In this document: piece after piece, positions 4,000 through 31,647 of the stretch
Numbering within the stretch: the first letter of the stretch is position 1
How the letters are laid out: each line of letters opens with the position of its first letter
Assembly: GCA_024704765.1 (NCBI GenBank)
Contig: JAKMXF010000066.1
Coordinates: forward strand, 1,237,883-1,301,882
Origin: Oopsacas minuta
Taxonomy: Eukaryota > Animalia > Porifera
Reading direction: 5' to 3'
DNA length: 64,000 nucleotides
The notes under the pieces: generated by a model
What the model saw: only the letters and a program-made list of their open reading frames with translations
The model's database searches: none
Told to the model about the DNA's origin: nothing
Program-made: the position numbers and the translations under genes

Positions 4000-4672
4000 A
4001 TGATAGATTGATCATCGCCCCTTACTGACAGTTTTGTAAGTCTATCAGTGTGCTAGTCATATATACATACTTTATTGGTAGAATTTCAAGACTAGCTTAA
4101 GTAGCATTTGCAGTCATAGTGCTAATAATTCGCAATTATTATTACACTGGTTAGCGTTATAAATGTTGGGAAACAAAGTATTTTGCTGGTCACTTGGCAG
4201 GGTGTGATACAGAGGGAGACCTGCGATTCCCCCCTTCCAGGAATTGTATTAACTTCATGGTGATTAACTAGAGTAATTCAAGAATCAATGGTGCAGTACT
4301 GCTTACATGTATTTTATAGCACAGGATGATTCTGTCAATTAACTACAAAAGCACACATTAAATTTGGCCTATACATGTATATGCCTATATCCTATAGAAC
4401 GGTTTGTTTCTAGAAGCTCACACCGCAAGCAAAAAATTCTGTATCAAACCCTTATGGGGTGTATAAATCCGTAAAGATATCTGTATTGCATAAATAGAAA
4501 ATGGATCCAAATAATTGGCCGTTGGAAAGCATGGAATATTTTATCTTCAACCCCCCTTGAAAAGTTCTAATTTCGTCCCTATAACTCAAAATATATATTG
4601 GTAATAAAATAATTTTTTTAAAATAAACACGCAAAAAGCGTTCAAAGGGAAAAATGGCTTCATAAGTATGGA

Positions 4673-7600
4673 TTATGTTTGTTTTTTCAATATATCTTGC
4701 TGCATCTTCGGTATTTGATCGAGTTGAATAAGCTTGTCCATTATTATTTCTTGATTCTTAGTTATTTTTTGATCAAGTTTACTATAGATCTCATCCAAGC
4801 GTTTTTCAACCTTTTCCAATTCTTCTGATTGTAATTCATGTTGTGTATTCTCGTCAGGCTCACTACGAATGTTGTCCGTTAGTTTATCTTTAGATTCTTT
4901 GTTGGAATTGCGTTGATCCTTCGTTGCTCCGTCATTACCACTTCCAACAGAGTTATTGATACGCTGGTTATATCTTGCATAGTATGACTTCCAGGTCTCT
5001 AATGAGATTATAATGCGCTCTACTATTATACGTTTCAACGGTCTACGTAATGGGGAAATCACTTTAAATAGGATACTCGATTGAGTCTCGTAATCTAATG
5101 CAAGTTCCGCTTTGAAATCTAACAGCTCTTTGTTCGTATATATTGTTGTATAGGTTTGAGAGAGTTGTGCGATAAATACATTAAGAAGGACCACAATTAT
5201 ACAAAAAGCAAATACAAGATAGAAAGCGGAGAATAAAAAAGGCACTTCACGAAAAGATCCTTCATAATTACCTGGGCCTCCATCAATGATGAATAATAGA
5301 CCAGAGAGAAATGGTGTTGTTAGAGGAGAAAATGGCAAAGAATCATCCCTAAACCAGCTTGAAAATGAGCATTGTACACCGTCAGTACAATATGTCCTAG
5401 CGACTAGTTGTATACTCCCGATGTAGCTGATAAGTAGGATTATTATTACAAGAGAGAACCTTGGGACATCTGCGGAAAGGACGTTAGAGAGAGTTTCAAT
5501 ATACACGCCGAGAGATGGAAACATTTTGGTGTATTTGTAAAACTTGAAAGTGAAAAATGTGAATGTTAGAGCAGAGCACATCCAATGTAAAGCGCTCCAA
5601 ATTGGACTGATGGCTAACAACAGGCGAAGGCAGAATAGAAGTAATAAGAAAAAAACGCTACAAATATCGATGATATTATAAGTTTCTCTGAAATGTCGGT
5701 AAACTGCACGAGGGAAGAAATCACATTTACGATCAAAGTTATACATTACTTTATCGAGCTTCACTGGAAATTCATAGAAAACACGTCTAACCACTTTCTG
5801 AATTGATCTAGTAAATTTATTCGATTCTCTGTCACCATAATATTGAACCTGACGTTTCCTTATGTAATCAAGCTCACAAGAAGTGAAGAAAAGGTTCTGA
5901 AGATAACGCCATTTCGCTTCAATCTCTAATAACTCATTTGTAATAAAAAACCATGTAACAATCAATATGTACGATTCAAGGCAAAATCTGAAACGATCTC
6001 TATGAGTGTCATAGAGGAATAATTCAGAATCACATTTGGAAGAAGCGAAATACAATGCAAGACACAATGGAATATACAAGAAGATAAAGTATAGGAAGAA
6101 CAGACTCATGAACCACCACCGATAGATAATCAATTTCTCCTCTATTAAAAATTTCAAGACAGGATGATACTTGTACTTCATAACATTAGATCGATACAAT
6201 TTATGCCATAGCGGAGCCAGATGAAAATTAAAAAATCTAAAGTTTGGATAATCCCCCTCCTCGTTCGAATCCATTAGTTTTGTATCGATCTGTACATTAC
6301 GGCTGTCTTTGATAACGGTTTTGGCAAGAACCTTCGAGAAATTGTGATAATCTCCATTGTTAACCATTCTGTGCACGACATCTGGACAAGCTTCGAAGTA
6401 CTCACGATCACAAAGATCCACAAACAAATCTACCATTTCTTGTTGTCCACGTTTCCGTGCAAGATCAATTGGGCTATGACCATCTACATTTCTACCATTC
6501 ATTATATGAGTGAATAAATCAATCTTTGCCTTGTGGATGTATGGAATGATATACTCTGCGGTTTCAAAGGACTTGTATTTGGCTAGATAATGAATGACAT
6601 TATTCTTATTTGGGTCACACGTATCAAATGTATCCAGTAAGTACTCATAATTGGTTGTAGTGAGTAGTTTGAAGAATTGAATACGATCCAATCTAGCTGC
6701 TAACATTACAGGCGTAATACCATCTAGATCACAGTGCATTAAAGCTTCCACATATGTCATTTTGTTATAGGGGGGTTTAATGAATTCATCTTTTTTGGTT
6801 GCTTCATCTAAGAAGAATTTCATGACTTCATAAGCCATTAGATCTGAATTGTCTCTGTATTGAATGGCGTAATGCAGGACACGCTTGCCATCTCTATCAG
6901 AAGCTGCGAGAGCAATTCCATATCTCAGTAATAATTCTATTCGTGAGACACTGCTTTGTTTCGCAGCATAATGTATTATAGTGCAGTCAGCTGAACTGAT
7001 ACGTCTTTTCAGATTTACCCTTTCATTTTCTTGTTCAGAGTTTGCCATCAGTTTCTCTTCGATATATTTGTTACTGATAGTGTCATAGGCTAGCAGATTA
7101 AGGTATTTATTAATGTTTGCACCTTTCTCATGCTCAACGAGCGATATAGCGAATTTTGTATGATCTCTCTGCATAGCCACTTCGAATGGTGTGCCTCTAG
7201 AACTATTCAACTGTATGTCAGCACCTGCAGCTATCAATAAACCACCAATAGCCTCATTACCTGATTCAGCTGCGATGTGTAGAGGGGTTTGATCTTCAGT
7301 ATCGCGAGTTGAGAGAATTCTTCCTACAATATTTCCAAACTCTTTATCTTCATGTTTACCAATTTCTTCAATCGCATTAATGATTCCCTTCACTAACCCT
7401 TGATTATTTTCGAATACAGCTAAATGTATTAACAGTCCTTTCCTTCCATCGCCAAATGACACTTCGTCGTATGAATGTTTCCATGGTTGTAACATACAAT
7501 TTATGATAGCCTCATCCTTAGGAATGCAAACAGGCATTTCTTTTTTCTTATTTTTATATACCAATGGTTTCATGTATTCCAATTCACGATCAGCTAAGTG

Positions 7601-10600
7601 ATGCTCTTTTCCTTTCTTTATCACATGAGACATAATGATTTTCACTGTTTCAAAATCAACATTCTTTGTTGCTATATGCAAAGCAGTGTTACCATCTCGA
7701 TCAGATTTTTCTAACGGTACACCTGCATCAAGTAGTAACTTAGTCATAAAGACTTTCTGTCTGTCTCGTACTGATATGTGTAATGGAGTTAAGGCGTCGG
7801 CATTCTTTTTGTCCAAAATAACGTCATACTTTTTCTCTTTATCCTGATTCTTTACAGCAGTAATGACCTTCTCAAACAATTCCATATTGGCTTCAGGCTT
7901 TTTATGAATCGTAGCCAAATGTACGATAGTGTTGCCGCTGGATTTTTGCATGACAGAGAGACTGGCCTTGTTATCAATGAGAATCTTGACGACTTGTTCA
8001 TTAGAACCTATTATTGCGATTTGTAACGCAGTATGACCTCCGCTATTTTCAAGATTTAACAAACCTATAAGTTTGCCAGCTATATCTTCATCGTTATTCA
8101 TTTTTTCGATCATCTCTTTTATACTTTGGAAGGCTGCGTTTTCTTTATTGGTTGGATTTTGCAATAGAACGTGCAGGATCCCATTTCCATCTTGATTTGT
8201 CTCTTCAACATCGGCACCACGTTTGATTAACGCAATGAAAAACTGATATTTTCCAGAGTTTATGCTTATCTGCAATGCAGACTGATTTACATAGTTCCGA
8301 GTTTTCAGGATTTTTTGTCTTCCTTCCCCTCTCTTTTCGAAGTTTTCCGTCTCTTTCAGTAGATACTCGAGAGTTGTAAGATTTTCTACTGTGTTTTTAG
8401 CTGCACAATGTATTAGAGTATTTCCATAGGTATCAACTGTCTCATATTCAAAATCAGGTTGTTTCTCTTCGCATAAAAACTTCATTACAGGCATGGATGC
8501 GTATTGTGCAGCCAGATGCATTATACCCATTTTAGCACTAAAATTGATCTCACCGTCGTCAATTAGTTTTTGAACAAGCTCGGGGCATTTACTAGCGAAA
8601 CAGTGTGTCATTATGGATTTACATTCTTCATCGCTAAACTTTACATTCTTCATCCCTAAATATTCGACATCCTTTTCTGGTAAAACTTCGGTATCCTTTA
8701 GTTGTGGAAGTGTTGAAACTAGGTACTTATCTCCAAATTTGTATGCAACTATGTACTCGTTGATTTGAATGTGGTCTTTCTTTTCCCTTTTACCAAGCAA
8801 TAAGTTGCCATTTTCAACAGAGGCCCCCACAGTATACGTATCGCATCCAATTTCTCCAATCTCTATCGACACTTTTGCACCTAAGTCAATTAGTGTCTGA
8901 GTAAAATTCAAGCTCTCACGTTTTATCGCTAAATGCAATGGAGTGAATCCATTATTGTCCATGATGTCAAGAAGATGGCTGTCTTTTACATCCTTACATA
9001 GATCTAAGAATTTTTTGTCACGATTATTACCAATAATGGAATGCAATACTGTCCATTGTTTATCTGCATCTCGTAATTTTAGTGCAGGCCATTGTTTATC
9101 CGTATCTCGTAATTGTAGTGCATATTTGATTAGCTTTTCGAACGCGAAATAGAAATCATACTCCACTGTGAGATGTAAGGCAGTTTTACCATCAAAGTCC
9201 TGTAAACTCAAAAGTAGAAGACCGAAACGATTTAGTTGTCCATCTTCTGTTTTGAGTTGTTTCAGAACCTCAGAAAATATATCTTCATTCTTTGTGATAA
9301 CAGCATGGTGCAGGATAGATCTATTGTGGCTGTCGAGGTAAGTAATGCTATCTGGATTGAATTCACGAGTATAGCATAATATTTTCTGTAGAATGCTAAG
9401 AGCAATATTTTGGTTTGATTTGGTAATTTTAAAGTAGCGATCCTTGGATATTGCAGTATGTAACGGCGTTTGACCATTATTACTGCGTTGGTCGAGGATA
9501 GATTTATCAGAGATTTTCCTTAATTCTTCTGCAGCAAACAACAAATCGATTATTGTATATGCTTCTTTACAGTCAAGAAAGGTTGCGTAGTGTAATGCTG
9601 TGTAACCCTCTGGATCTCTTACATACAACTGTCCATAAGATGCGCTTCTAGACTCCTGATCGGGTTTATTCAAATCTTCCAACAGGTGTCGAACACATTT
9701 ATCGCTACCATAAGAGATAGCTAAGTGTAGGGGATTATATCCACATGTATGAAGGTCTAAGGACCCGAATGAAATCTGCCAAATCCAGCTCGCGTTGCTG
9801 TAAAGTTGATAATCAGTATCTTCTATAACTTGGGCTAGGGCTAAAGGTCCCGAACCATGCCTGGTTGATTCTAATATCGGCCATGAATAACCACGTGTAT
9901 CCTTCAGATTGAATAACATGGGATTCTTCTCAATACACATAGCCAGTACGTCAGTAAGGTAGAAAGGTTCATTTGGACGATATATAATGGAAAGATGGAC
10001 GATGGAAAACCCATAGAGTAAAGTAGGGAGAGATAAATTGGCTTTGTATCTGAAGAGGATAGTGAGTGCTGTAATATTTCCAGCTATAATGCTGATATGT
10101 AATGCTGTATATCTTTCTTGAGAAGCCAGTGAGTGTATCTCTCTTGAGGAGCCAGTGCCAGTACAATCAATCAAAGGTACACCGTTTATGAATGTAGATC
10201 CAGGTTTTTCCTCTTCCCTCTGTTTAATTTTGTCTAGAAGTGTATTTAGGTATGAATCAGTACTGGAGTTTTTCAGTATGATTTTGTGAATGAGTGTATT
10301 GCGTGTAGGGTCATAGTAATTCAACACAGCTTGATACTCCATAAAAGTGTATTTTAGAAACACATCAATCTTATCTTTTTCTAAGGCAATGTCCAGTGGA
10401 CGGAGACCATATTTATTCTCTATGTTTATTATTTCAGATAAACCTCCTACATTCTCAAGTACGTCAAGTAGAAATTGTACATTTTCAATGTCATTGTGGA
10501 TAGCACGGTGGAAAATTCCATTACCATCTTGATCTGTTGTGGTGTAATCAAATTCGAGTTGATTGATTATGTAATCAATTACTTGGCACGTTCCATATTG

Positions 10601-13123: not shown

Positions 13124-13130
13124 GAAATCG

Positions 13131-13161
13131 CTAATTCAAACCAATATAATTAAAGTTAGTA
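13131..13161 (-). other. Splice acceptor (AG at 13132-13131) with a TACTAAC branch point (13161-13155), 7 nt upstream of the channel ORF ATG
   Basis: Minus strand reads CCCTACTAACTTTAATTATATTGGTTTGAATTAG|CGATTTC-ATG; branch A is 25 nt from the first downstream AG. Confidence 0.6.
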
Positions 13162-13223
13162 GGGAAGTTTACAAGATATAGCTTCTAGTGATCGAATACA
13201 CTCCTGGAGTAATATTCTAATTA

Positions 13224-13357
13224 CAGTCAACTCCCATTAAATCGAAGCTCAAGGGCAGCGATAATTAGTTCGCAACAGGCGGAGTTCGTTATAACCGCCG
13301 ATGAATGTTTTACATTTTAGACTTGGATTCAAGCTAGTATTTGTTCGGAGTTGACTG
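13224..13357. mobile_element. MITE, pogo/Tigger-like (family A)
   Basis: 11-bp TIR CAGTCAACTCC…GGAGTTGACTG with TA on the left; internal core is shared with copies at 31.5, 39.1 and 51.4 kb. Confidence 0.7.
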
Positions 13358-13650
13358 CATACAGGCCAAATATTCAAACACTAATTGCAAACATAAACAA
13401 GCATATCTATGTGTGAATAGGCAACATAAAGGAAAGAAAGCTGCATGAAGTACGCTGTATCATGTAGCTATTCCTTCTTGCAAAGAGGAGTAAATTACTT
13501 AATAAAATAAGACTAAAATAATCATATTAAAATACAAATAATACAAAAGAATGTAGAAAATAGTCATAAATGTAGGAAAAAAGGTACCAATAAATGTTTT
13601 GCAATTTATCATAACATACCTATCTCATGAAGATCAAGTCTTGCCACAAG

Positions 13651-16600: not shown

Positions 16601-19600
16601 AAACTCAGGTAAAATGAGCTTTGAATACACTGTAACTCAATTTTTGATAATAATTCTGTTTTGGGATTAGGATAATATTTTGAAATAGAATATATTACAA
16701 ATTTTAAACTTTCCAAATTCGGATTTGAAACAGCTGATTCTAACATTGAGAGATGATTGTCCTTTCCTTGAATAAGAGTTGAATAGTCCTTTTTGAGGAT
16801 TAATTCGATTGATTTTGGTGCAGCATGTTTAGCAACAATTTCAGAAATATCTGAATTATCGAAAAGCTTTTTATCCAAAGTAAGCTTATGTTTGTGAAAC
16901 ATAGCATCAAGTGGTTCAGAACATGGACATGATGCTATTGTGGAAAGAGATTCTTTATCCAACTTTTCAAGTTTTGTTACTTTAATTGCCTTAAGTTCGT
17001 GAATAATAGTTTTCTCTAGATTGGGTAACTCAGATAAAACCATAAAAGTTGATTTCTCATCTTTGACCTCAAATCCTGTCCAGAATTTAAAATTATCGTA
17101 CTTATACTTGAAAACATCAAGTGATAGAGTTCCTTTCAGGTGACAGAGTGTAAAACCTTCCTGTTCACTTTTCAATGCCAATTTAACTTTAGCATTGATT
17201 AGAGATTGTATAGCTGTTATGTTACACTGTGTAATCGCATAATGTAATGGAGGTAGACCATCTTTATTCTCTTGAGTGTACATTACATAATGTTCGGAGC
17301 TATTTTGAAGTTTAAGAATAAGTGTGTTCAGGTAAGTAGGGTTAGAACGTGTTCTCACGGAATAATGTAAGATATTATTACCAGATTTATCTAGAATATC
17401 TAGTAGACATTGCTCAGCTAACAATCTTTCAAAAGCCTTACTGTGATCGTGTTCGATACTAAGATGTAATGCTGTTTTTCCATTAACATCTTGTAAATTG
17501 ATAATATGATTTTTGTGCGACACTTCAACGCCATTTGATTGTTGAAATTGCATTGTGGCATTGATAATAACCTCGAATACATTTTCGTGGATAACCGCTA
17601 GATGAAGAGGAGTTTGTGTGTTGCAGTCTGTTGTAGAAAGAACAGAAGGGAAGTCTAACAATCGAGTGACCACATCTAAATCCGATTTGGTTACAGCAAG
17701 GTGTAGGGGAGTTTGGCAAAGCTCATTGCGAATGGAATAGAGGTTACATTTTTTTGGGTGGTTTTTGGCTTCAAAATCTAAAATTATATCAATGATCCCT
17801 CTATTCTTAGAATCAACAGCATGGTGAAGTACAGTGTTTTGATCACAATCTTGAGAATAAATGTCAGGCTTTGATTTTAAGAGTAGTTTAGTGACATTCT
17901 GTCCTTTCCTAACGGCTAAATGAAGAGGAGTACGCATTTTCTCGTTTTTCGCGTTAATTATTTCTAAATTACTTTTACTATAGGTAATTATTTCTTCTAT
18001 AATCTCAAAATCATCCGTTTCGATGGCTAAATGCAATGGTGTGTTTCCTTCAGGACCATGAATTAGCAGTGAAGGTTGGAAAGTCAACAGTATTGAAAGT
18101 AACTCTTTGTTTTTCAACTTCACAGCTAGGTGTAAAGCTGTCATGCAATGAATATTTTGTACATCAATAAATCGAGGATTTTCTCCTACTTGACACATTT
18201 TCCAAGGTGTCAGTAGAGAATCAATAAAAGAAGTGTCTTTAGCTTTGGAAATTATCAAATGCAGGAGTGTGTTTCCATCGCGATAAGTTTGTCTAAAGTT
18301 TGCGCCGAAATTGAGTAGCTGTATAAAAGCATTCGCTGTACTATTTTTCAGACTTTGTTCGAGTGCCCCTTTCAAACATATCTCAATATTCGGAGTCCAT
18401 TCTGGAATTTTGGGGAGTTTTTGTAAGAGAAAATGTAGGACAGAAATATCTTGATTTTCTACTGAGAATTCTATCAATGAACTTTGGTTTTCGATTCTTT
18501 CATAAACTTCATATCTTAGACGTTCTACAAAATATTCAGCAACTTCCTTAGATGAATTCTTCAAGACATTTTGAATATGTTTAGTATTTTTTGGATTTTT
18601 ATCAATTAATCCTAATTCCTCGGCCGCCTTGAATGGATCTGAAGAATGGCACTTGAAGATGGCATTAATCAAGTCTTGGTTACTAATTCGTTCTACATTT
18701 TCTATCTTTTGTTCTCCAATGTATTCAGTGAACTCGAGGTCGGGCAAACGAGCAACGATCCAATTAGTTTTGCGAACAATTTCAATAGGATAGCCAATCC
18801 AAAATACAGGAATCTCATTAGAAGTTACTTTCTTCGAATGGAAAAGACGTAACTTGAGTTTACTGTTTCTACAAGAGAGTATACTTTGATTTTGTTCATC
18901 ACGAAACAATAATCCAGCAGATGCTTCAACCAGTTTTATAGCAGCTTGATTATTCTGCAATTCTATCGCAAGTTGAAGAGGCGGATAGCCTTCTTGGTTT
19001 AATGCATAAAAGTAGGATTTGTCTTCTTCATGACATTCTTGAAGTTTTGAAATAATAATATTCAACTCTTCACAATTACTACCAGATATCCTGACAGCAG
19101 TGTGTAGTAATGTATCTTTGAAATTATCAACAATATCCAGGCACGCTTTGTATTCTAGCAACTTCTCTATAGCATAAGTAAATTGAGTTTCAATACTCAA
19201 ATGGAGAGGTGTTTTCCCGTTTATATCTTGATAACATAACAAGTGTTTGTCGAAATTTATGGGTTGAGTTAAACTTTTCAATTGATTGGTGATACTATTT
19301 AGGATGAAATCGAAAATTTGGATATTATGTGACAAGACTGCAAGATGTAGAGCAATTTCCGATTTGTTATTACAAATTGCTAATACTGTAGGATCTGCAG
19401 GAACGAGAGTTTTCACAGAACCGAATTGTTTTCTTTGGACAGCAATATGTGTGGGCGTGCACCCAGAGTTATCTTGCTGTGTAGTTATATGATGATTTTC
19501 CAATTTAAATACTTCCTTCTCATGATTCAGGATCATAATAATCATACTTTCTCTTTTTGCAAGTGTAATAATATCTACAAGTACTCTATGTAGTATTGTT

Positions 19601-22600
19601 GAACCATCCATATCTCTAGCATAGAAATTAGCTTTATTCTGGAGTAGAATCTCAATTATTTTTGAATTTGTATTTTCAAACGCTACAAAAAGTGGAGTCA
19701 ACCCAAACTTGTTTTTAGCCTCAATACACATGGATGGATTTTCAGTACTATTTATAGCTGTTATTAGGATGTTGAGAATCGATTCAGTTCTGCTTTCCAT
19801 TGGGTAATTCACAGCTAGATGGAGAGCTGTGTCTTGATTAAGATCACAGGATTTGAGATTTACATCATATTTTAGCAATAGCTCCAATATATCTTCTCTA
19901 TTTTTCAAAACTGAATCGTGTAATGCAGTTTGCTGATTTGCATTAGGATAATCTATCAATTTATATTTCATATTTTTATATGAAAGAGTCATTCCTTGTG
20001 CAACATTCAAAATCGATTCTGCATACTCGACACCCTTGTCTTCACAAATAATATAATGCAGTAGAGTCCCACTTTGTGATCCATAATGAAATGATAGAGT
20101 AATTGATGGATGATATTTCAAGAGTTCAATTAGAGCGTTGGTATTCCTTTCATCCAAACTTTTAATAAAAGACTTTTTTAGACAAGAGAAAATATCATCT
20201 TTGTTCAAACCTGTTTCTGTACTTAAGTCATTGGGTAATGCTTGGATTGCTACGATTAGAGTTTCAATATTGCTGTTCGCAACAGCTGATTCTATAATTG
20301 AAGGACACTCGACATTTTTGTAATAAACAAATCTCCCCTTAAATTGAGTGAGGAAATATCTCATCACCTGAGGTGTAGCATTCTCACCTACAACTGATGG
20401 TAAAGCTTTCGCTTGAACATTTTGATTCGCAATCAGGAATTTTTTCCTAAAAGCTGCTGCTAGTGGTTCGTATGAACGACATTTTAATATAGCAGTTAGT
20501 ATACCTATATCTTCAAATTGGATCTTTTTATCGAGTTTTGTCAATTTATGTTGAGGATCTGTCAGAATGGTCCTATTGAGTTCTGGTAAGTCAGTCACAA
20601 CCCAACATTGATTGGGGCCATTTAGTACTGGATAACCGATGTAATAAGTAGAGTTTGTGTCAAACAAAAATTCAAGTTCTAATCCTTCTAAGTTTTCACA
20701 TAATGTGATATCTCCAGAACTATTTTCGAAAGATAAGCTTGCGTTTTTCTCAAGTAACAATTCGATTGCAGGGAGAATTCCATGTAATATTGCAAGATGC
20801 AAGGGAGGTAAACCCTGTGAATTTATAGTACTAACGAGTCGCCCTAAAGTTTCATCATCTGTATTGATGTGTCGGATTATAGTTCTAAGAGCTTGATCAT
20901 CAGCCTTCTTTACTGCTTTGTGAAAGATTGAATTTCCGCCTTCATCACAAATTAAAAGGCAAGGATTTACTGAGAGGATCTTTTCTAAGGCAAAAATGTT
21001 ATTAAATGCAATAGATAGATGTAATGCAGTTCTACCTTGGATATCTTGTTGGCAAATTACTGCATGCTGATGTGTGCCATAGGCTCGAGGTTTAAGGTTG
21101 AGAATTTCGAAAACTTTAACAAAAATGCTCTCATTAGGAATGGAAAGTTTAGGGCTACCAATTTCTGGAGCTATTGCTACATGTAACAGTGTATGCATGT
21201 TTTTATCGTATAATTCAACCACAGAGGAGTCTGCTTTTATAAGAAGAGCAACTTCTGATTCGTATTGATGTTCTACCGCATTATGTAGAGCAGTACATCC
21301 ATCTCTATCTTGTTTTCTTAACAAGTTCTTCGATCGATCATCTTTCTTGTTAGGAAATTCTTCTAAAAGGAAGGTTAGTGTTTCCAGTCGATTCTCTTTA
21401 TTTTCAACAAGCATTGCATGATGAAACATTGTTCGCTCATCTTTATCAATTGAGAATAGAGATGCTCCTTTCTCTAATAAGTTTTTACAAATATCTTTGC
21501 TACCTACACTTGTAGCCAAATGAAGTGGTGTACAACCGTGGATATTCTCGGACTCGAAATAATATGGATATTCATCTGTCGATATTTTCTGGAATATTTC
21601 CTGAGCTATCAACAAATCTCCTGTACTTGCAGCTAGATGGACAATTGTATTATCATTCAAGTCTTTCAACATTATTTTTTGGCAATGTTTGAGAATTATT
21701 CGTAACAAATCGTGTCTTTTCTTTTGTATACAGAGATGAAGTGCAGTTTTACCTTTGTTATTTTGGTGGTCAATCATTGATTTGCCATCTATAAATGTGC
21801 TTTGACGGAATTCACCTTCTTCTCTTGTCAAAATTTCCTCAAGGATACAGGTGAAGAATTCAATATTTTTGTCTTTCTCAGCTATAATATGTAAGATAGT
21901 TCGATCCTTTTCATCTCCATATAAATAGTTAAGTTTTGCCCTTCGAGCTAACAAAGTCTTTAGATTTGTTGTTGAGTCATTAGAAATGCTGAGTTCTACG
22001 ACGGTCTTGAGTATTGAATGAATTTCTTGTTCATCAAGTTTATCAAGTAGTGGAAACTTATTCAAGGTGTTCTCGATTATTTTCGTGTTGTCATTAATTA
22101 TTACGGCTTTTTCGAGCGTTTTGAGACTCTTAGAGCATTTCATCTTATCTGGATAATTTTGAAAGAGATAGTTTGTCACAAGCATGCTCGAATTATCAGC
22201 AACCTTCCAATATAGATCCCAGGTTTTGTCCTTCGAAAAGTCAAGGAATTTGCTCGCTATCAAAGCCTCCAAAGGTTCAGTACAACTACATTTGATTATG
22301 AACTGTATTGCATGCTCTGGCAATTCCGTCACTAATTTAAGCTTAGCTGAATCCTGGAATACTTTTGTACTCAATTCAGGTAACAGAGAAGCAATAACAA
22401 TACTATTTTTAGTATCTCTAGTATAACAGATATAGTACTGATATTCCTTAAAATAGCCAGGTCGTATACACATAAATCTCAATTTGAGACCATCTATACC
22501 GTGGCATAATGTTATGGTCCCATTTGGTGATGTAAGAGATAGCTGAGCCCCTTCATTACAAAGAATTTCTGCTGATTCATAATTATTGCATGCTATGGCA

Positions 22601-24873
22601 TGGTGAAGTGGGGAAAGACCTTTATTATTAACGGCGTTCAAGAATCTCATAATGCCTTGCGAGTTTCGCGATTTTATTTTTTTCAATAATGTATTCAAGC
22701 ATTTAATACTGTTAAATTGCACTGAAATATGCAATGGAGAGTTCCCATCCATATCTGTAGAATCAAGTCGAGGCTCATAAGCTAGTATACTTTCTATTGT
22801 ATTTAGATCTGCACATTCCATAGACAAACTTAAGGCTGATTTTCCCTGCGAATTTCGCATGTTAATAAAGTCAGTAGAGGATATAATATGAATATTCTTC
22901 AATGATCCCTCAAAAACAGCCCTCAATATTGACTTCACAACTAAACCTGTATATTTTACCATCACTGCTAAGTGTAGTATTGTGTTTTCATCACAGTCTG
23001 TAATAGAGATGTCTATTTGTTGTTTCAATAAATATTCTATTGCTTTCAAATTTTGGCATTTTATCGCTAAATGAAGTGCAGTACATCTCTCTGAGTCTAC
23101 TCCCCGCACAAGATCAGTACTTTGTTGTTGATTCAATGAATTATATTCCAAGAGTATTTTCATTATCGAAACTGATTTATTCCTATCTTTAATGAAAACG
23201 CTATGGTGGAATACAGTTCGTTTATCTTCGTTAATAGCGTAGATGTTTGCATTGTTATCAAGTAGTAACCTCACGATATCTTCAGAGGCCTTATCTACAG
23301 CGTTGTGGAGAGGAGTGAGTCCCATCAAATTCGTGGCATTGACCATCTCGCTTAATCCACTTGTATTCTTATACTGATCGAGAATTAGTTTCGTACTGTT
23401 AAGACTGTCAGCATTTACAGCTAAATGCAATGCTGTATTACCTGAACTATCAGCTATGGTTGGATCAGGATTCAGCTCTAATATCATGCTTAAGCATTCT
23501 GGAAAGTATTGTGCACAGAGATGTAAAGGAGTAATTTTCGAATTGTTTGTATAACAATCGACTAGAGGAGTATTGTTAAGAAACGGTTTCAATTTGTTAC
23601 TTTGAATTCGTTCAATGAATAACCTCAGAAATACATTTCTATTGTTACTGTTTAGGATCAAATGTATTATGGTATTGTCCTGATGTTTTAAGAAAGTGAG
23701 TGAAAATTGGAACTTTTCATCCAAAAGATAATTGAAAGTTTTCGGTTTGTTCAAGTCTATACATAAAAGCAGTGGATGAGTGGACTGAATTTGGAGAAGT
23801 ATTCCTCCAACCTTCTGAAAGCTTGCACTTCTTTGATTCACTACATGTTCACATAATTGTATAAAAACTTCTTCATTTCTATGTTTGATTGATTCATACA
23901 ATAAACTGCCGTTGTCGATGTTGAAGTAATCTTGAACAGTGATTTTCTCTTGGATAAGATAGTCAATGACACGAATAGATCCTATTCTCACTGCTGGGAT
24001 ATATATTGTGGTTTTTAAATTTTCATTTTTCAAAGTCGCACTTACTTGAGAAAGGAGAATCTGAAGAAGCTGGGAAGATGGTTGTATGATGGTTGCCTCA
24101 ATCAATTTCGTATTTACATTATTTACATTTTGTATTGTAGAATTCGTGTGAATCACTGCATTAGTTAGGTCATTCAATGGAGAAAGTATCCGATGGATAT
24201 TTTTCTGACTAAATGAGTATCCGATATACAATTCGTTCTTATATTCACAAAATAGTAACTTAGAGTCGTTGACAATATCATGAAATACTTGTGTACCATT
24301 TGTGATTGAGTAGGATAAATTAGCTTTTTGTTTGATCAATTCCTGGCACGCATACTTGTTTTTGTGATAAATTGCAAATAGAAGTGGAGTCAATTGATTA
24401 TTATTGAGTTTTGTTAATAAACTGGTCAGTCCCTGCTGTTGAACGTATTTTAGCAATAGTATAAGAATATTAATTGCATTGGGAAATTCACAAGCTGTAT
24501 GGATAACTGTATTGCCTTCGATTTCAGTACTCATGAGAGAGGGTTGTTGTTCCAATAATTGCTCGATAGGTTCATATTTAAGACATTTTATGGCAAAGTG
24601 GAGAGCATCACAATCTTTGGACTGTAAAATATTCCTACTGTGGCTACTGGTTATATGTGTTATTATACACATCTGGATAGTAAAAATGTCCTTTTCATAA
24701 TGCTTGACTGCTTTATGCAGTATTGTACAGCTTTCGTTATCGATGGCGGATAAATCAGGATCAAATGTTAACAAAATTTTCAAAGAATCTACATATCTTT
24801 CAGAAATAGAGAGATTTGTTGGAGTTCTACCTTTATTATCTTTGATTTCAAGGAGAGATTTCTCTGGTAACAA
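13651..24873 (-). CDS. Giant ankyrin super-repeat ORF (3740 aa, no TM domain; the TTG start is probably not the real start)
   Basis: 11.2-kb open frame of ankyrin repeats arranged in ~590-aa modules; frame is open upstream only to a TGA at about 24890, so it looks like the continuation of the 24882-27339 ORF across a frameshift. Confidence 0.85.
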   Translation of the reverse strand: MLPEKSLLEIKDNKGRTPTNLSISERYVDSLKILLTFDPDLSAIDNESCTILHKAVKHYEKDIFTIQMCIITHITSSHSRNILQSKDCDALHFAIKCLKYEPIEQLLEQQPSLMSTEIEGNTVIHTACEFPNAINILILLLKYVQQQGLTSLLTKLNNNQLTPLLFAIYHKNKYACQELIKQKANLSYSITNGTQVFHDIVNDSKLLFCEYKNELYIGYSFSQKNIHRILSPLNDLTNAVIHTNSTIQNVNNVNTKLIEATIIQPSSQLLQILLSQVSATLKNENLKTTIYIPAVRIGSIRVIDYLIQEKITVQDYFNIDNGSLLYESIKHRNEEVFIQLCEHVVNQRSASFQKVGGILLQIQSTHPLLLCIDLNKPKTFNYLLDEKFQFSLTFLKHQDNTIIHLILNSNNRNVFLRLFIERIQSNKLKPFLNNTPLVDCYTNNSKITPLHLCAQYFPECLSMILELNPDPTIADSSGNTALHLAVNADSLNSTKLILDQYKNTSGLSEMVNATNLMGLTPLHNAVDKASEDIVRLLLDNNANIYAINEDKRTVFHHSVFIKDRNKSVSIMKILLEYNSLNQQQSTDLVRGVDSERCTALHLAIKCQNLKAIEYLLKQQIDISITDCDENTILHLAVMVKYTGLVVKSILRAVFEGSLKNIHIISSTDFINMRNSQGKSALSLSMECADLNTIESILAYEPRLDSTDMDGNSPLHISVQFNSIKCLNTLLKKIKSRNSQGIMRFLNAVNNKGLSPLHHAIACNNYESAEILCNEGAQLSLTSPNGTITLCHGIDGLKLRFMCIRPGYFKEYQYYICYTRDTKNSIVIASLLPELSTKVFQDSAKLKLVTELPEHAIQFIIKCSCTEPLEALIASKFLDFSKDKTWDLYWKVADNSSMLVTNYLFQNYPDKMKCSKSLKTLEKAVIINDNTKIIENTLNKFPLLDKLDEQEIHSILKTVVELSISNDSTTNLKTLLARRAKLNYLYGDEKDRTILHIIAEKDKNIEFFTCILEEILTREEGEFRQSTFIDGKSMIDHQNNKGKTALHLCIQKKRHDLLRIILKHCQKIMLKDLNDNTIVHLAASTGDLLIAQEIFQKISTDEYPYYFESENIHGCTPLHLATSVGSKDICKNLLEKGASLFSIDKDERTMFHHAMLVENKENRLETLTFLLEEFPNKKDDRSKNLLRKQDRDGCTALHNAVEHQYESEVALLIKADSSVVELYDKNMHTLLHVAIAPEIGSPKLSIPNESIFVKVFEILNLKPRAYGTHQHAVICQQDIQGRTALHLSIAFNNIFALEKILSVNPCLLICDEGGNSIFHKAVKKADDQALRTIIRHINTDDETLGRLVSTINSQGLPPLHLAILHGILPAIELLLEKNASLSFENSSGDITLCENLEGLELEFLFDTNSTYYIGYPVLNGPNQCWVVTDLPELNRTILTDPQHKLTKLDKKIQFEDIGILTAILKCRSYEPLAAAFRKKFLIANQNVQAKALPSVVGENATPQVMRYFLTQFKGRFVYYKNVECPSIIESAVANSNIETLIVAIQALPNDLSTETGLNKDDIFSCLKKSFIKSLDERNTNALIELLKYHPSITLSFHYGSQSGTLLHYIICEDKGVEYAESILNVAQGMTLSYKNMKYKLIDYPNANQQTALHDSVLKNREDILELLLKYDVNLKSCDLNQDTALHLAVNYPMESRTESILNILITAINSTENPSMCIEAKNKFGLTPLFVAFENTNSKIIEILLQNKANFYARDMDGSTILHRVLVDIITLAKRESMIIMILNHEKEVFKLENHHITTQQDNSGCTPTHIAVQRKQFGSVKTLVPADPTVLAICNNKSEIALHLAVLSHNIQIFDFILNSITNQLKSLTQPINFDKHLLCYQDINGKTPLHLSIETQFTYAIEKLLEYKACLDIVDNFKDTLLHTAVRISGSNCEELNIIISKLQECHEEDKSYFYALNQEGYPPLQLAIELQNNQAAIKLVEASAGLLFRDEQNQSILSCRNSKLKLRLFHSKKVTSNEIPVFWIGYPIEIVRKTNWIVARLPDLEFTEYIGEQKIENVERISNQDLINAIFKCHSSDPFKAAEELGLIDKNPKNTKHIQNVLKNSSKEVAEYFVERLRYEVYERIENQSSLIEFSVENQDISVLHFLLQKLPKIPEWTPNIEICLKGALEQSLKNSTANAFIQLLNFGANFRQTYRDGNTLLHLIISKAKDTSFIDSLLTPWKMCQVGENPRFIDVQNIHCMTALHLAVKLKNKELLSILLTFQPSLLIHGPEGNTPLHLAIETDDFEIIEEIITYSKSNLEIINAKNEKMRTPLHLAVRKGQNVTKLLLKSKPDIYSQDCDQNTVLHHAVDSKNRGIIDIILDFEAKNHPKKCNLYSIRNELCQTPLHLAVTKSDLDVVTRLLDFPSVLSTTDCNTQTPLHLAVIHENVFEVIINATMQFQQSNGVEVSHKNHIINLQDVNGKTALHLSIEHDHSKAFERLLAEQCLLDILDKSGNNILHYSVRTRSNPTYLNTLILKLQNSSEHYVMYTQENKDGLPPLHYAITQCNITAIQSLINAKVKLALKSEQEGFTLCHLKGTLSLDVFKYKYDNFKFWTGFEVKDEKSTFMVLSELPNLEKTIIHELKAIKVTKLEKLDKESLSTIASCPCSEPLDAMFHKHKLTLDKKLFDNSDISEIVAKHAAPKSIELILKKDYSTLIQGKDNHLSMLESAVSNPNLESLKFVIYSISKYYPNPKTELLSKIELQCIQSSFYLSLANKNTDALFVLLDYQLPFELLYSEDNTLLHLMIMKCVSPEFIHTLFISINNHIINLECPYIDLRNAKGETALQLSITRGPIANVKTLLKYNPDIFFQDNDRNTSLHTAAKQKNTEYVECILNAVEKSKLKILLDLINSNSQTPLHTSVVNGNCNVTRYLLKSDASYNTRSSYEYCILHHAVELKDEKERREMIDLILEYENTFHCKEVSLTTYQDDLGYTPLINAIVLRYQDAVAKLIGFVETLRICDNTGSSPLHNAVKSNHVEIFNIILKAILDRENQETSWLDYRLVCYRDNKHQTPLHVSINTHNIHALKQLLLSKPCLDTIDLEGNTLLHTAISLGDQDCLEILLTEYSHRFSTDYAYFVYMRNSKELPPLQFAIKQKKIECIETLLKNHVHLAFCNFCGDITLADGLDSLSLSFVEYKEDGYIYWVGYEFFAEKKLCWVISPLPNIDKTILKINGPNIAKINRFNSVYLQAVSKSKSFEPLNAALRNSILSFDTSLEGRRAVAIVSQYGTKQSLRCLLSKMKSNLFTRLDEMDSIIEYAIPNTDNDALEFLLESLPEFHEELIPKCEGSEKYFENIQICFCFRRSFEKSILNQTPDALISLLKHFPKLDYTYGERDNTLIHLMIVQDKSCEFINRVLEWISQSIKLTSKYSSVLDLKNSLGQTMLHSCIYAKQWDNLNVLLKHKPDLYVQDNNGETSLHYAVKTEDLLYVQILHENAPNQQTFLSIRNLNGDTALHLAIQNGNIEVTNFLLQSKSPFYPHKDDKSTILHIAVEFLDSVKRMVLIETILKNEPEPSSGSDRIITRLKNHNGYTPLHLAIERKYSDVVNILLGVDIGAMYIRDDNERTPLHLAIIPSSPGAQKCTEVSTIHQPILDSVLNACEKLDGKHEENTPCSAKHLICIQDKHKRTAMHDAIQHLNVYAFTELLKTGSCLDIPDEEGNILTHEAVKNPDDITCLIKLVEELKRRYPDSLYNCFQ

Positions 24874-24881
24874 AACATCTA

Positions 24882-27339
24882 TTAGCCTTCACGTGTCTTA
24901 AATTCGAGATCCTTAATAAGAACAGCAAGGTGCAGAAGAGATAGTCCTGTCACGCTATTCTTATTGTTAAGATTATGATTTTTCCGAAATGATTCAAGAA
25001 TTTCTATCTCCGCATTTAACACAGCCTTTTCGATTGGTGAAACGTTATTATGGTTTAGTGTATGGTATAGATATTGTAGAGGTATAATATTTGAATTGTC
25101 AATGGTGTTCATAACAATCTCGAAAAATTCAAGATTTCCTTTTTCCACGATAATATGAAGTACAGTGTTATCATTTTTGTCAACTAGATCAAGAGACGCA
25201 TTCTCTTTTATTAATACATTAAAAATTGATAGATTATTTTCAAGAGCTGCTATCATCAATGCAGAATACATATTACTAGTGTTCTGTAAATTAATAAACT
25301 CCAAGTAACCATGGGTTGACCTGTGTTCTTGCAAGACGGATACAAATTCTTGTGTCACTCCAAAACTGCTGATACACGCTACAGTATGTAGGACTGAATT
25401 TCCAATAGTGTCAAGTTCAGAAAGTTGTGAAAATGGAGTATTTGTCGCTAATAATTTAACTGCTACGCCATTCTTACATTTGATACTGTAATGAAGCAGT
25501 GTATTGTGCTCATGATCGAACAATTGCTCATCTTGATTGTAAGTTGGAAACGGGTGAAGAATACTAAATAATCGATCCAAAATAACTTCATCGTGACAAC
25601 ATCTTACAATATGGAAATAACACGAGTAACCTTGGATTAAATTACAAGCACCTGCTCTCAAAAATTTCTCTGTGGCAGCAAACTGTTGACATTCAAGACT
25701 GAAGCGTAATTGAGTAAATTCTTGTTTCAAAAGATTATTTTCCAGATATTTTTGCATAACAAGCACGAAGCATTCTTCATCATAATGTAATACAGCTGTG
25801 TGAAGGATGGAGTGATTTTGTGAATTAAATAATTCATAAAGTGGTTTGTTAGCTGAGGTATGATAGGCAAAAAAATTCAGGAATATTTTCAAAATTTTGA
25901 TTCTCTTATCTTTAATCGCATTTGACACATTTTGTAACCATGCTTCTGTACGTAGGGTAACATTATTTTCTAAGATAAGAGATATTCCAGCATAGAATTC
26001 AACACTAATAGCTAGCTCTAATGGAGTCAAATTATCACTGTTTTTAGTGTTCAGGCAAGTGGTGATTTTCGTATCCTTGTGTTCAAGCAATTTTTCAAGA
26101 TTATTACCGTTTTTTCCAAGCATAGCTTTGTGAAATGCATTGTTATTAGTTCTGTGCTCTGTTAGGCAAATGTCTATATATTCTCTGGAAAGTACTGTGA
26201 GTAGCATTAAGGGATGACCAAATTCAGCAGCTAAATGTAACAAACTGCTGCCGCATTCTAAGTTTTGGTTAATGCTGACTATAATGTTATATAATACAAC
26301 CTGCAATAGAGTAGGGCAAGGAAACTCTAAGATAAGTTTTAGGAAATCAAAGTTCTCGTTTTTATGGAGATCGTACTTTTTGAATGTCACAAAGTCATTT
26401 TTGAAGTATCGTATTTCGTTAGGCTTGTCAAGGAGTGTTAAAATGCTACTGTTCCCTATTGGTGTGTTAACTAAAATAGCTACATGTTGATTCAAATGAC
26501 CTACACTTACATCGAAGTTTGGTAAAACGTAAAAATCTTCCTTTTGAATAAAAATGCATGCACCAGCATTCAATAATGCTTCAGTAATTATTTGACGTGT
26601 TTCAGAATAATTTCCTTTGAGAGAAATGGAAAGCAGTGTTTCGTTTTGTATATTGACATGATTAATGTGTGTATCTAGCTTATTGTCTTTCAGTTGAAGC
26701 AATTCTAAGATAATTTCATCACTAAGGGATTGTTGTAACAGTGCGATATGTAAAATTGAGTTACTGTCGCTGTCTAAATAACTCCAATCAATGCTCTTTG
26801 TGAAGTTATTTATAATGCACTGAACTAATGGGAGGTTTTCAGGTGAGTTTAATATCACAAATATAAGGATCTCTATCATAGTTGAATTGAATGGAGGGTG
26901 ATTATGTAACCAGTCGGTTCTTAGGGCAGCCATAAAAACGGGAGTATCGGTTGAGTTAAAAAGTTCTTTCATTAGTTTAGCGGTACGACTCCCTTCAACA
27001 AAACCTTCGAACACATTTTTCAGTTTATCTTTCTCTAAAGCATGCCAAGTATGGATGTCTGATATATATACAAAGTTAGACTTGTGTTTTATAATCAAGT
27101 TATAACTCGGCATTGAGAAAGTGCCACGCTCTTTGAGTATTCTAATCTCACCTGACTGTAGTATTGAGTCTTTAGTTGACTGTGGTGAAAATGTCTTCGA
27201 TACTAAAAGTAAACAAAATACGCAATTCTATTGCTTCATTACATTTATATAGCTTTCTTAAAAGTCAAAATTACTCAAACGATAATGTATAACATTAGTT
27301 ATCCAACATACCTTTTCCAAAAAAATTTCTTTCTGCCAT
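24882..27339 (-). CDS. N-terminal part of the giant ankyrin locus; exons 27339-27312 and 27202-24882 (782 aa to the frameshift stop)
   Basis: Exon 1 ATG GCA GAA AGA AAT TTT TTT GGA AAA G|GTATGT; 109-bp intron ending TTTGTTTACTTTTAG; the phase-1 join is in frame with the 743-aa track ORF; ankyrin repeats follow. Confidence 0.75.
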
Positions 27340-29272: not shown

Positions 29273-29369
29273 TAGTTTGTTATAATATACCAATGCTTTT
29301 ACATTTTATTTAGCATTCTTATTTTACGAAGTTTCCTCTGCCAGGACATTTGTACGTAGTGATCACTTT

Positions 29370-31223: not shown

Positions 31224-31487
31224 GAAGAAAAAATATATTTCACTTAGGTGCTAGAATGATTTATTCTATTTCTTGGGTTCTTAGGATAAAATTCAACACA
31301 GCATAATTCTGGTATTTTACAATTGTATTTAGGGAAGAACATACTTTCCAACCATTTGCGAGAAGTCCTTTTCTGACCTATTGGGAGTGTTAAGATGGGA
31401 CTAAGTTTGGAAATGTCAGCTATTATATATGTTAGATTGCTATTCAGGGAAATTGGGTATTTGCTAATACCTATAAGGCTATACCTA

Positions 31488-31572
31488 TAGACAACTCCAG
31501 TTACATACCTTATTTGATTTAATTATCGCAGTCCCTTGAGCTTAGATATGACCGGATAGCGGGAGCTGACTG
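31488..31572. mobile_element. Short MITE (family A)
   Basis: TA-TAGACAACTCC…GGGAGCTGACTG-TA; core TAATTATCGCAGTCCCTTGAGCTTAGAT. Confidence 0.6.
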
Positions 31573-31647
31573 TACATTCACTTGTCCTGATATACAGTTA
31601 AACATTCACTAACTTTTAGTAAATTCATATCTTCCTTTATTCTTAGA

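What the first reader, a model, noticed from the sequence alone, without database searches (positions are those of the whole stretch)
4673..27339. A ~7,300-aa ankyrin super-repeat TRP channel locus spanning three in-register ORFs
Seen: three same-strand ORFs (782 + ~3745 + 2816 aa) share one module architecture, and only the last carries the TRPA-like pore. The spacer motif recurs at about 24220, 22430, 20640, 18800, 17080, 15305, 12880, 10880 and 8750, i.e. every 1.72-1.84 kb in the middle ORF. Subtracting the 527-bp gap between the middle and channel ORFs gives about 1.9 kb, so the register is preserved. Established: TRPA1 has about 16 and NOMPC/TRPN 29 ankyrin repeats, the latter acting as a gating spring; glass sponges conduct electrical signals that arrest pumping. 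Inference: this is, or descends from, a channel with an ankyrin tether several-fold longer than NOMPC, or a channel plus a separately encoded giant ankyrin partner. It is a candidate mechanosensory system.
Basis: partly seen in the sequence, partly recalled or inferred. Interest (0 to 1): 0.85.

Follow-up and report, generated by a model that had tools for sequence, protein, structure and literature searches.

The report
Split giant ankyrin–TRP channel gene pair
In the glass sponge Oopsacas minuta a roughly 4,500-residue ankyrin-repeat protein gene sits directly upstream of a 2,816-residue TRP-type ion channel built from the same 600-residue repeat unit; the two are separate genes, the pairing is conserved across glass sponges, and the channel's cytoplasmic arm is longer than that of NOMPC, the long-armed mechanosensory TRP channel used here as the benchmark.

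Summary
Three minus-strand ORFs (743, 3,740 and 2,816 aa) carry nine copies of one non-ankyrin module at the stated places. Only the last ORF has a channel domain.

The reading "one ~7,300-aa protein" does not hold.
- ORF1 and ORF2 are one ancestral ~4,500-aa ORF, broken here by a single 1-nt frame change. Four orthologues are intact.
- ORF2 and ORF3 are separate genes. The stop, a 450–600-nt spacer, a TAG acceptor and the ATG are conserved in four divergent glass-sponge lineages and in two paralogous pairs.
- The frame across the spacer is not conserved.
- One RNA-like run joins a foreign 21-nt leader, carrying an in-frame stop, 7 nt before the ORF3 ATG.

The ~605-aa super-repeat runs in register across the gene boundary in every species, so the pair looks like an old gene fission. 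Each unit is a small β-barrel (weakly Tudor/SH3-like) followed by about 14 ankyrin-type helix pairs.

The pore belongs to the TRP superfamily. It is closest to algal TRP1 and to TRPV/TRPVL-type channels, not TRPA, and has a TRPV5/6-like IIDGGPGNY filter. A mechanosensory role is untested.

The scan noted similar giant ankyrin and TRP genes elsewhere in this genome.

The parts
24882..27113 (-). ORF1 (743 aa): the N-terminal part of the upstream giant ankyrin gene
   Evidence: Pfam finds ankyrin repeats only. It aligns colinearly with residues ~660-830 of the intact orthologue P0099.
24874..24892 (-). Site of the 1-nt frame change that separates ORF1 from ORF2, inside an ankyrin repeat
   Evidence: The window reads ...LHLAVLIKDLEFKTREG* and then *RLIDVLLPEK. 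The orthologue reads ...LHLTVMIIKIDFATRQELIKELLTEN without a break.
13651..24873 (-). ORF2 (3,740 aa): the rest of the upstream ankyrin gene, with six beta-barrel-plus-ankyrin super-repeat units; it ends at unit position ~575 of 605
   Evidence: Orthologues P0099-P0102 (4,520-4,561 aa) are 45-48% identical over the full length.
24049..24327 (-). Beta module 1
   Evidence: E 1.7e-20
22255..22548 (-). Beta module 2
   Evidence: E 3e-29
20443..20745 (-). Beta module 3
   Evidence: E 1e-28
18622..18918 (-). Beta module 4
   Evidence: E 2e-28
16894..17190 (-). Beta module 5 (the unit that was folded)
   Evidence: E 7e-30. AlphaFold2 models have pLDDT 91.7 for the unit and 90.4 for the module.
15121..15414 (-). 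Beta module 6
   Evidence: E 4e-29
13124..13650 (-). Spacer between the two genes. After the TGA (13651-13653) come 31 nt and a donor-like ATAG|GTATGT (GT at 13619-13618). The acceptor TTAG| lies at 13132-13131, 7 nt before the ATG.
   Evidence: The RNA-like run X4 has no depth at 13276-13611, and its contig leaves the window at 13132 into 21 foreign letters.
4673..13123 (-). ORF3 (2,816 aa): the ankyrin-TRP channel. About 2,300 cytoplasmic residues carry 3 beta modules and 30-40 scorable ankyrin repeats, followed by the 6TM pore domain and a C-terminal coiled coil.
   Evidence: The exact protein is on record in NCBI/UniRef.
12689..13003 (-). Beta module 7 (first in the channel)
   Evidence: E 1e-22
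10673..10987 (-). Beta module 8
   Evidence: E 2e-13
8558..8803 (-). Beta module 9 (degenerate)
   Evidence: E 6e-5
5132..6133 (-). Transmembrane channel domain (ORF3 aa ~2331-2664)
   Evidence: Hydropathy peaks; Ion_trans E 8.8e-7; 6pw4 at E 1e-9 with the single sequence and 1e-19 with the profile
5261..5290 (-). Putative selectivity filter IIDGGPGNYE
   Evidence: It aligns to the TRPV6 TIIDGPANY segment. It is conserved in most family members.

Best explanation
This is a conserved two-gene module of glass sponges, not one gene. The upstream gene (ORF1+ORF2) encodes a soluble protein of about 4,500 residues: an N-terminal region of ankyrin and partial-unit matches, then six full ~605-residue super-repeats. 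Each super-repeat is a ~65-residue beta-barrel followed by about 14 ankyrin-type helix pairs. In this assembly the gene carries one 1-nt frame change. The downstream gene (ORF3) encodes a 2,816-residue TRP-superfamily cation channel. Its cytoplasmic N-terminus continues the same super-repeat array with three more beta modules and 30-40 scorable ankyrin repeats. The channel ends in a 6TM pore with a TRPV5/6-like acidic filter and a coiled coil. The upstream protein ends, and the channel begins, at the same position of the repeat unit in every species examined. The pair therefore most likely arose by fission of one longer channel gene, before these lineages and the paralogous pairs diverged. The channel gets its own mRNA: a splice acceptor lies 7-8 nt before its ATG, and an RNA-like run joins a foreign leader there (spliced-leader trans-splicing, which is known in glass sponges). 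Inferred, not shown: the channel is a tetrameric Ca2+-permeable channel, its long solenoid arms serve as a tether or scaffold, and the partner protein binds the arms or extends them. I put a mechanosensory role at about 0.25-0.3.
For: ORF1 and ORF2 were once one ORF. The junction aligns colinearly with the orthologue, and four intact orthologues of 4,520-4,561 aa exist.

The gene pair is conserved. L001, L003 and L004 each have the ankyrin gene, a spacer and then the channel. P0102 and P0093 share one contig. The paralogous pairs L005 and L006 have the same layout. The lineages are only 45-64% identical to one another.

The neighbourhood is syntenic: histone deacetylase, DEAD helicase, frataxin and BTB-Kelch genes are shared.

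The register is preserved. Upstream proteins end at unit position 570-577 and channels start at 569-577.

The stop, acceptor and ATG are conserved. The distances from TGA to ATG after a hypothetical cis-splice would be 38, 35, 39 and 36 nt, so the frame is not kept.

In the RNA-like run X4 the contig matches 12100-13132 exactly and then runs on into 21 foreign letters containing an in-frame TAA. X4 has no depth at 13276-13611. The leader is absent from the window.

PMC10282587 reports a trans-spliced leader in a glass sponge.

Channel identity rests, and the pore motif. The unit structure comes, and the ankyrin repeat counts.
Against: The run kind of X4 is not on record, and the leader junction rests on one Logan contig.

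I did not show here that the same leader is joined to other genes.

Expression of this window's own upstream gene is not shown. X4 contigs over the ORF2 3' end carry 2-8 mismatches and may come from paralogues or the other haplotype.

The frame change could mean the upstream gene is dead in this species.

Two family members, P0001 and P0125, have no upstream ankyrin gene within 10 kb, so the partner is not obligatory.

A donor-like site is conserved 27-32 nt after the upstream stop. Cis-splicing into a dicistronic mRNA therefore cannot be excluded.

There is no functional evidence of any kind.
Confidence: 0.75

Rival explanations
1. One giant ~7,300-residue TRP channel gene: the ORF2/ORF3 gap is an ordinary intron and the ORF1/ORF2 break is an assembly error, so a single protein is made.
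For: The super-repeat register runs across the gap. The gap has a donor-like GT and a good acceptor. The ORF1/ORF2 break is a single frame change.
Against: The donor-like site lies after the TGA stop in all four lineages. No conserved donor precedes the stop. The frame across the hypothetical splice is not conserved (38, 35, 39 and 36 nt). No joint across the gap was seen in any run. The only RNA-like junction brings in a foreign leader with an in-frame stop. The ATG and first residues of the channel are conserved in the orthologues and in the P0002 and P0004 paralogues.
Confidence: 0.05
2. A dicistronic or operon-like unit: both genes are transcribed as one precursor from the promoter upstream of ORF1. 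The channel cistron is then released by spliced-leader trans-splicing, or carried on a cis-spliced dicistronic mRNA.
For: The genes share a strand, and adjacency is conserved in three orthologous or paralogous groups. The acceptor sits directly before the ATG with a foreign leader joined. A donor-like site is conserved just after the upstream stop. This is compatible with the best explanation and would be a refinement of it.
Against: The spacer is 360-840 nt, which from my own knowledge is far longer than classic nematode operon spacers (~100 nt). There is no RNA depth at 13276-13611 and no cis joint in X4. Most genes in this genome appear to carry such acceptors whether or not they lie in operons (and earlier scan notes).
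Confidence: 0.3
3. In Oopsacas the upstream ankyrin gene is a recently inactivated pseudogene, and only the channel is functional.
For: A frame change splits it into 743 and 3,740 aa. Neither piece is on record as an annotated protein, while ORF3 is. This allele's own expression is not shown.
Against: There is only one lesion in 13.5 kb of AT-rich sequence. The 11.2-kb remainder is fully open. DNA-run contigs over the ORF2 3' end differ from the assembly by ~1-2% and have about 2.7 times the depth of the ORF3 side. Paralogue or haplotype confusion during assembly and polishing is therefore plausible, and the indel may be an assembly error.
Confidence: 0.2

Closest known systems
NOMPC / TRPN (Drosophila; PDB 5vkq)
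   Same: A TRP channel with a very long N-terminal ankyrin solenoid. The folded unit matches NOMPC's ankyrin domain structurally (Foldseek E 4e-14).
   Different: NOMPC has 29 repeats in one uninterrupted array. Here the arm is about 2,300 residues with three inserted beta-barrels, plus a separately encoded ~4,500-residue continuation. The NOMPC transmembrane domain is not among the best 60 sequence matches of the family profile.
TRPA1
   Same: An ankyrin array followed by 6TM and a C-terminal coiled-coil-like tail. A Sycon relative was auto-named TRPA1 by its source.
   Different: No TRPA1 chain is among the best 60 PDB matches. Profile comparison with a bona fide TRPA1-type protein (P0136, which hits fly TRPA1 at E 4e-171) gives only 89% probability and E 2e-6.
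TRPV5/6 and TRPVL-type channels; Chlamydomonas TRP1 (6pw4)
   Same: These are the best sequence matches of the pore domain: 6pw4 at E 1e-19 and TRPV2/1/4/3 at 1e-11 to 1e-8. The filter string IIDGGPGNY resembles the TRPV6 string IIDGPANY. Among the non-hexactinellid proteins recovered by the pore-domain search are Sycon and Oscarella proteins, and these group with TRPVL-like proteins of Capitella, Nematostella and molluscs.
   Different: Identity is only 20-28%. TRPV and TRPVL channels have about 6 ankyrin repeats. No phylogeny with reference TRPs was made here.
Canonical ankyrins (AnkB/AnkR 24-repeat membrane-binding domain)
   Same: They are the best structural matches for the unit (4rlv, E 1e-17, 558 aligned columns).
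   Different: The window proteins have no ZU5, UPA or death domains. The beta-barrel-plus-14-repeat super-repeat is not a feature of ankyrins.
Spliced-leader trans-splicing in glass sponges (PMC10282587)
   Same: An acceptor lies a few nt before the ATG, and a foreign leader is joined in RNA-like data.
   Different: Only the last 21 nt of the leader were seen. Its identity with the published ~37-44-nt Aphrocallistes leader could not be checked, because no supplement is held.

Membership tests
TRP channel superfamily | Six-transmembrane domain with an S5-pore-S6 region homologous to known TRP channels | tested here: met
   Pfam Ion_trans scores 28.8 bits against a cut-off of 25. The family profile hits 6pw4 at E 1e-19, and TRPM4 and TRPV1-4 at 1e-11 to 1e-8. 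Hydropathy peaks lie at aa 2331-2647.
TRP channel superfamily | Tetrameric cation channel activity | not testable with these tools
   This needs expression and electrophysiology or cryo-EM.
TRPA | Pore domain closest to TRPA1 among the TRP families | tested here: not met
   TRPA1 is absent from the best 60 PDB matches. hhalign against the TRPA1-type P0136 gives E 2e-6 and probability 89%.
TRPA | N-terminal ankyrin array (14-17 repeats) | tested here: met
   An ankyrin array is present but far larger, with 30-40 scorable repeats interrupted by beta modules.
TRPN (NOMPC) | Pore domain orthologous to NOMPC, with a 29-repeat uninterrupted array | tested here: not met
   The NOMPC pore is not among the best matches. 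The array is interrupted by beta-barrels.
TRPV / TRPVL | Pore domain groups with TRPV or TRPVL in a phylogeny | tested here: inconclusive
   These are the best animal matches, the filter is TRPV5/6-like, and sponge relatives link to TRPVL-type proteins. No tree with reference families was built.
Spliced-leader trans-spliced gene | A leader encoded elsewhere is joined at an acceptor upstream of the start codon | tested here: met
   One X4 contig matches exactly over 1,033 nt and then continues with 21 foreign nt at the TAG acceptor. The leader is absent from the window and from the fetched loci. Caveat: the run kind is not on record.
Spliced-leader trans-spliced gene | The same leader is found on many other genes | not tested
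Earlier scan notes claim a shared leader in this genome, but I did not verify that.
Eukaryotic operon | Co-transcription of both cistrons on one precursor | not testable with these tools
   No depth was seen in the spacer in X4, but contigs cannot exclude a short-lived precursor.

The most novel reading that the evidence does not exclude
A split giant channel complex. The ~4,500-residue partner ends mid-unit exactly where the channel's N-terminus begins. It may dock end-to-end on the channel and rebuild, without a covalent link, a ~7,000-residue solenoid per subunit, with roughly 100-150 ankyrin-type repeats punctuated by nine beta-barrels. This would act as a tether or gating spring for a Ca2+-selective TRP pore. 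That would make it a glass-sponge-specific mechanosensor, or a Ca2+ entry route feeding the syncytial action potential.
Probability: 0.15. Interest if true: 0.85.

Novelty: new variant of a known kind. Interest (0 to 1): 0.6.

Why it matters
NOMPC's 29-repeat spring is the usual benchmark for a long ankyrin arm on a TRP channel. This family has arms of 1,600 to 3,300 residues, built from a regular super-repeat of a beta-barrel plus about 14 repeats.

In at least three gene pairs the array continues into a separately encoded partner, in perfect register. Each unit is more similar to the unit at the same position in other species (about 50% identity) than to its neighbours (20-30%), so the units appear individually specialised rather than interchangeable spring coils.

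Glass sponges are syncytial and conduct Ca2+-dependent action potentials, yet they lack Nav channels and obvious Kv channels (PMC10280926). A family of giant channels with a TRPV5/6-like Ca2+-filter motif is a concrete candidate for sensing or Ca2+ entry in that system.

The locus also offers a clean natural example of gene fission at a splice acceptor in an organism that uses trans-splicing.

I found no paper describing any of this.

Tried and rejected
- A simple identity autocorrelation of the joined protein showed only the 33-residue ankyrin period.
- A whole-protein self-BLAST returned only the identity hit. Fragment BLAST and HMMs were needed instead.
- My first home-made ankyrin HMM collapsed to 21 columns. 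I rebuilt it with fixed 33-residue windows.
- The 21-23-nt leader was searched in the window, the fetched loci and the JGI metagenome contigs without a hit.
- No supplement of the Aphrocallistes paper is held, so the published leader could not be compared.
- The beta module has no sequence match in the PDB. Only its ankyrin-like tail matches.
- The ESM Atlas gave only generic TRP/YVC1/PKD clusters for the pore.
- I looked for a donor upstream of the ORF2 stop that would allow a fused reading frame. There are only poor GT sites, and none is conserved.
- No TRP phylogeny was attempted, because no reference TRPV, TRPC or TRPN sequences were available through the tools.
- The only reads call went to the ORF2/ORF3 junction. 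The ORF1/ORF2 frame change therefore could not be checked against reads.
Full report
**What is in the sequence**

The minus strand of the window carries three long ORFs:
- 24882-27113: 743 aa from the first ATG, 782 aa stop to stop.
- 13651-24873: 3,740 aa.
- 4673-13123: 2,816 aa.

Pfam finds only ankyrin families in the first two ORFs. In the third it finds ankyrin repeats plus an Ion_trans domain at aa ~2473-2664. That match appears once the C-terminal 566 residues are scanned alone (28.8 bits against a cut-off of 25). Hydropathy peaks typical of transmembrane helices occur only at ORF3 aa 2331-2647.

The three ORFs are not in one reading frame.

**The organism**

- ORF3 is on record as an exact 2,816-aa protein in NCBI/UniRef.
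- A paralogue, P0125, is named "Ankyrin repeat protein [Oopsacas minuta]" and maps to assembly GCA_024704765.1.
- Earlier notes of this scan name the same species.

The genome is therefore that of the glass sponge Oopsacas minuta. Its genome paper mentions "many hits" for TRP proteins but does not describe this locus (PMC10280926).

**The repeat architecture**

Fragment BLAST showed that the non-ankyrin "spacers" are homologous to each other (25-31% identity, E down to 1e-33).

A 605-column HMM of the whole super-repeat finds the following in the joined protein (coordinates of the ORF1+X+ORF2+X+ORF3 concatenation):
- Full units at 927-1517, 1519-2119, 2121-2727, 2729-3304, 3306-3895, 3897-4523 and 4526-5194.
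- More degenerate units up to ~6450.

AlphaFold2 on one unit, with 39 aligned units as input, gave a confident model (pLDDT 91.7, pTM 0.83). It has a six-stranded beta module at residues 5-65, followed by about 14 helix pairs.

- Foldseek matches almost the whole unit to long ankyrin solenoids. Hits include AnkB 24 repeats (E 1e-17), ankyrin-1, fly TRPA1 and NOMPC.
- The beta module folded alone (pLDDT 90.4) resembles Tudor, chromo and SH3-like barrels only weakly (Z 4-5, rmsd 2.2-2.5 Å over ~50 residues). I describe the fold but claim no homology.

With a home-made 33-column ankyrin HMM I count 7-11, 60-74 and 30-40 repeats in the three ORFs. The structure suggests that more degenerate repeats exist.

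In the unit alignment, the folded unit is about 50% identical to the unit at the same position in three orthologues. It is only 20-31% identical to other units. The array is therefore old and positionally stable.

**ORF1 and ORF2**

The end of ORF1 and the start of the ORF2 frame align without a gap to residues 782-839 of orthologue P0099. The break is a 1-nt frame change inside an ankyrin repeat.

Four orthologous proteins of 4,520-4,561 aa from other assemblies cover ORF2 end to end at 45-48% identity.

ORF1+ORF2 is therefore one ancestral ORF of about 4,500 residues.

There is reason for caution about the assembly here. DNA-run contigs over the 3' end of ORF2 differ from the assembly by 1-2% and have about 2.7 times the depth of the ORF3 side. 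This points to near-identical paralogous or allelic copies. The assembly was a SPAdes hybrid polished with Pilon (PMC10280926).

**ORF2 and ORF3 are two genes**

The same arrangement occurs in three further assemblies: an ankyrin ORF of about 4,500 aa, a TGA, a 450-600-nt spacer, and an ATG opening a channel ORF of about 2,650 aa. These are L001, L003 (where the channel is fragmented) and L004. It also occurs on the contig that holds P0102 and P0093.

The lineages are 45-64% identical to one another in the ankyrin protein, so the arrangement is old.

Neighbouring genes are shared: histone deacetylase, DEAD helicase, frataxin and BTB-Kelch. The ankyrin-channel-HDAC block is inverted relative to L001.

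Two paralogous pairs have the same layout:
- P0104 (3,822 aa) followed by P0004 (2,127 aa).
- A 3,981-aa ankyrin ORF followed by P0002 (3,912 aa).

Two other family members, P0001 and P0125, lack an upstream partner within 10 kb.

In all four orthologous loci the spacer has this layout:
- It begins 27-32 nt before a donor-like AG|GTAT.
- It ends with AATTAG| or AAGTAG|, 7-8 nt before ATGGC.

If that donor and acceptor were cis-spliced, the TGA-to-ATG distance would be 38, 35, 39 and 36 nt. The frame is not conserved, so a fused protein is not the conserved product. No conserved donor precedes the stop.

**RNA evidence**

Four runs of one sample hold the stretch.

- Three of them cover the spacer exactly, which is DNA-like behaviour. 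Two of the three carry Nextera adapter ends.
- The fourth, X4, has no depth at 13276-13611.
- X4's 1,861-nt contig matches 12100-13132 without a mismatch. It then continues for 21 letters that are not in the window.

Read on the gene's strand, the contig runs: leader ...CTTAC, then AG, then CGATTTC, then ATG.

- The leader contains an in-frame TAA.
- The ATG at 13123 is the first ATG after the junction.

This is what spliced-leader trans-splicing looks like. That mechanism is reported for the glass sponge Aphrocallistes (PMC10282587), and earlier notes of this scan report it for this genome.

Other genes in the window also have TAG or CAG just before their ATG.

Caveats: the kind of run X4 is not on record, the junction rests on one contig, and I did not show the same leader on other genes.

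**Register across the boundary**

In every orthologue and in P0104, the upstream protein ends at unit position 570-577 of 605. The channels start at position 569-577.

The two genes together therefore form one seamless array. The simplest history is fission of a longer channel gene at, or next to, a splice acceptor, before the paralogous pairs and these lineages separated.

**The channel**

An exhaustive search with the C-terminal 566 residues found 90 relatives.

- The six closest are all giants: 2,127-3,912 aa, 44-69% identical in the pore domain.
- Shorter relatives of 640-1,250 aa follow. They include Oopsacas proteins and a Vazella transcript.
- Among the non-hexactinellid proteins recovered are Sycon and Oscarella proteins. 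Their own relatives are TRPVL-type proteins of Capitella, Nematostella and molluscs.

A profile of 18 family pore domains was searched against the PDB:

| Match | E-value |
|---|---|
| Chlamydomonas TRP1 (6pw4) | 1e-19 |
| TRPM4 | 1e-11 |
| TRPV2/1/4/3 | 1e-11 to 1e-8 |

No TRPA1 or NOMPC pore is among the best 60.

A genuine TRPA1-type giant gene model from a centipede (P0136) matches the profile only weakly. "TRPA-like" is thus not supported.

The stretch before S6 reads IIDGGPGNYE. It aligns with the TRPV6 filter segment IIDGPANY, and the Asp is kept in most family members. This suggests Ca2+ selectivity but does not show it.

**How it probably works**

Shown:
- Two adjacent genes.
- A conserved pairing.
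- A shared super-repeat in register.
- A TRP-type pore.
- An mRNA for the channel that starts with a foreign leader.

Inferred:
- The channel is a tetramer with four ~2,300-residue solenoid arms.
- The partner, built of the same units, binds or extends the arms.
- The arms act as tether, spring or scaffold.

A mechanosensory role is plausible by analogy with NOMPC, but nothing here tests it. I give it about 0.25-0.3.

The individually conserved units argue for specific binding surfaces rather than a uniform spring.

**Novelty**

The channel protein is in the databases as an unnamed ankyrin-repeat protein.

I found no paper describing giant TRP channels, the super-repeat, the beta module or the gene pair in glass sponges.

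The scan itself has first-reader notes on similar genes elsewhere in this genome, none followed up:
- A ~60-repeat TRP channel in one exon.
- A giant ankyrin gene with a ~590-aa super-repeat, 29 kb beyond this window.

I class the finding as a new variant of a known kind.

Noticed in passing
window 13222-13256: A 31-35-nt stretch inside the spacer has 10-30 times the depth of its surroundings in the three DNA-like runs. Many different contigs run into it. It occurs once in the window. It is probably a short dispersed repeat of this genome.
   Followed up: partly
window 13578-14600: Read contigs over the ORF2 3' end differ from the assembly by 1-2% and have about 2.7 times the depth of the ORF3 side. 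One variant contig diverges completely below 13578. A near-identical paralogue or second haplotype therefore exists, and the assembly here may be a mosaic.
   Followed up: partly
window 2803-3999 and 29370-38216, compared with L001:18331-27929: Synteny with another glass-sponge assembly covers histone deacetylase, DEAD helicase, frataxin and BTB-Kelch. The block of ankyrin gene, channel and HDAC is inverted relative to the rest.
   Followed up: partly
window 2790-2803, 29350-29370, 31640-31648, 36305-36315: The other genes in the window also have a TAG, CAG or AAG acceptor-like site 1-13 nt before the ATG. This fits widespread spliced-leader use.
   Followed up: partly
L005:17100-21955: The paralogous pair P0104/P0004 is followed by Rieske and two WH1-only genes. 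Scan notes place a WH1 pair and another giant ankyrin gene 22-29 kb beyond this window's end, so a second such locus probably lies nearby in Oopsacas.
   Followed up: no
P0136 (Strigamia maritima, 2,749 aa): This centipede gene model joins a very long ankyrin region to a true TRPA1-type pore (E 4e-171 to fly TRPA1). It is either a fused gene model or an independent case of a giant ankyrin TRP.
   Followed up: partly
P0003:2123-2642 (L001): This orthologue lacks the four residues DGGP of the filter motif in the called protein. This is either a real deletion in the pore or an assembly error.
   Followed up: no
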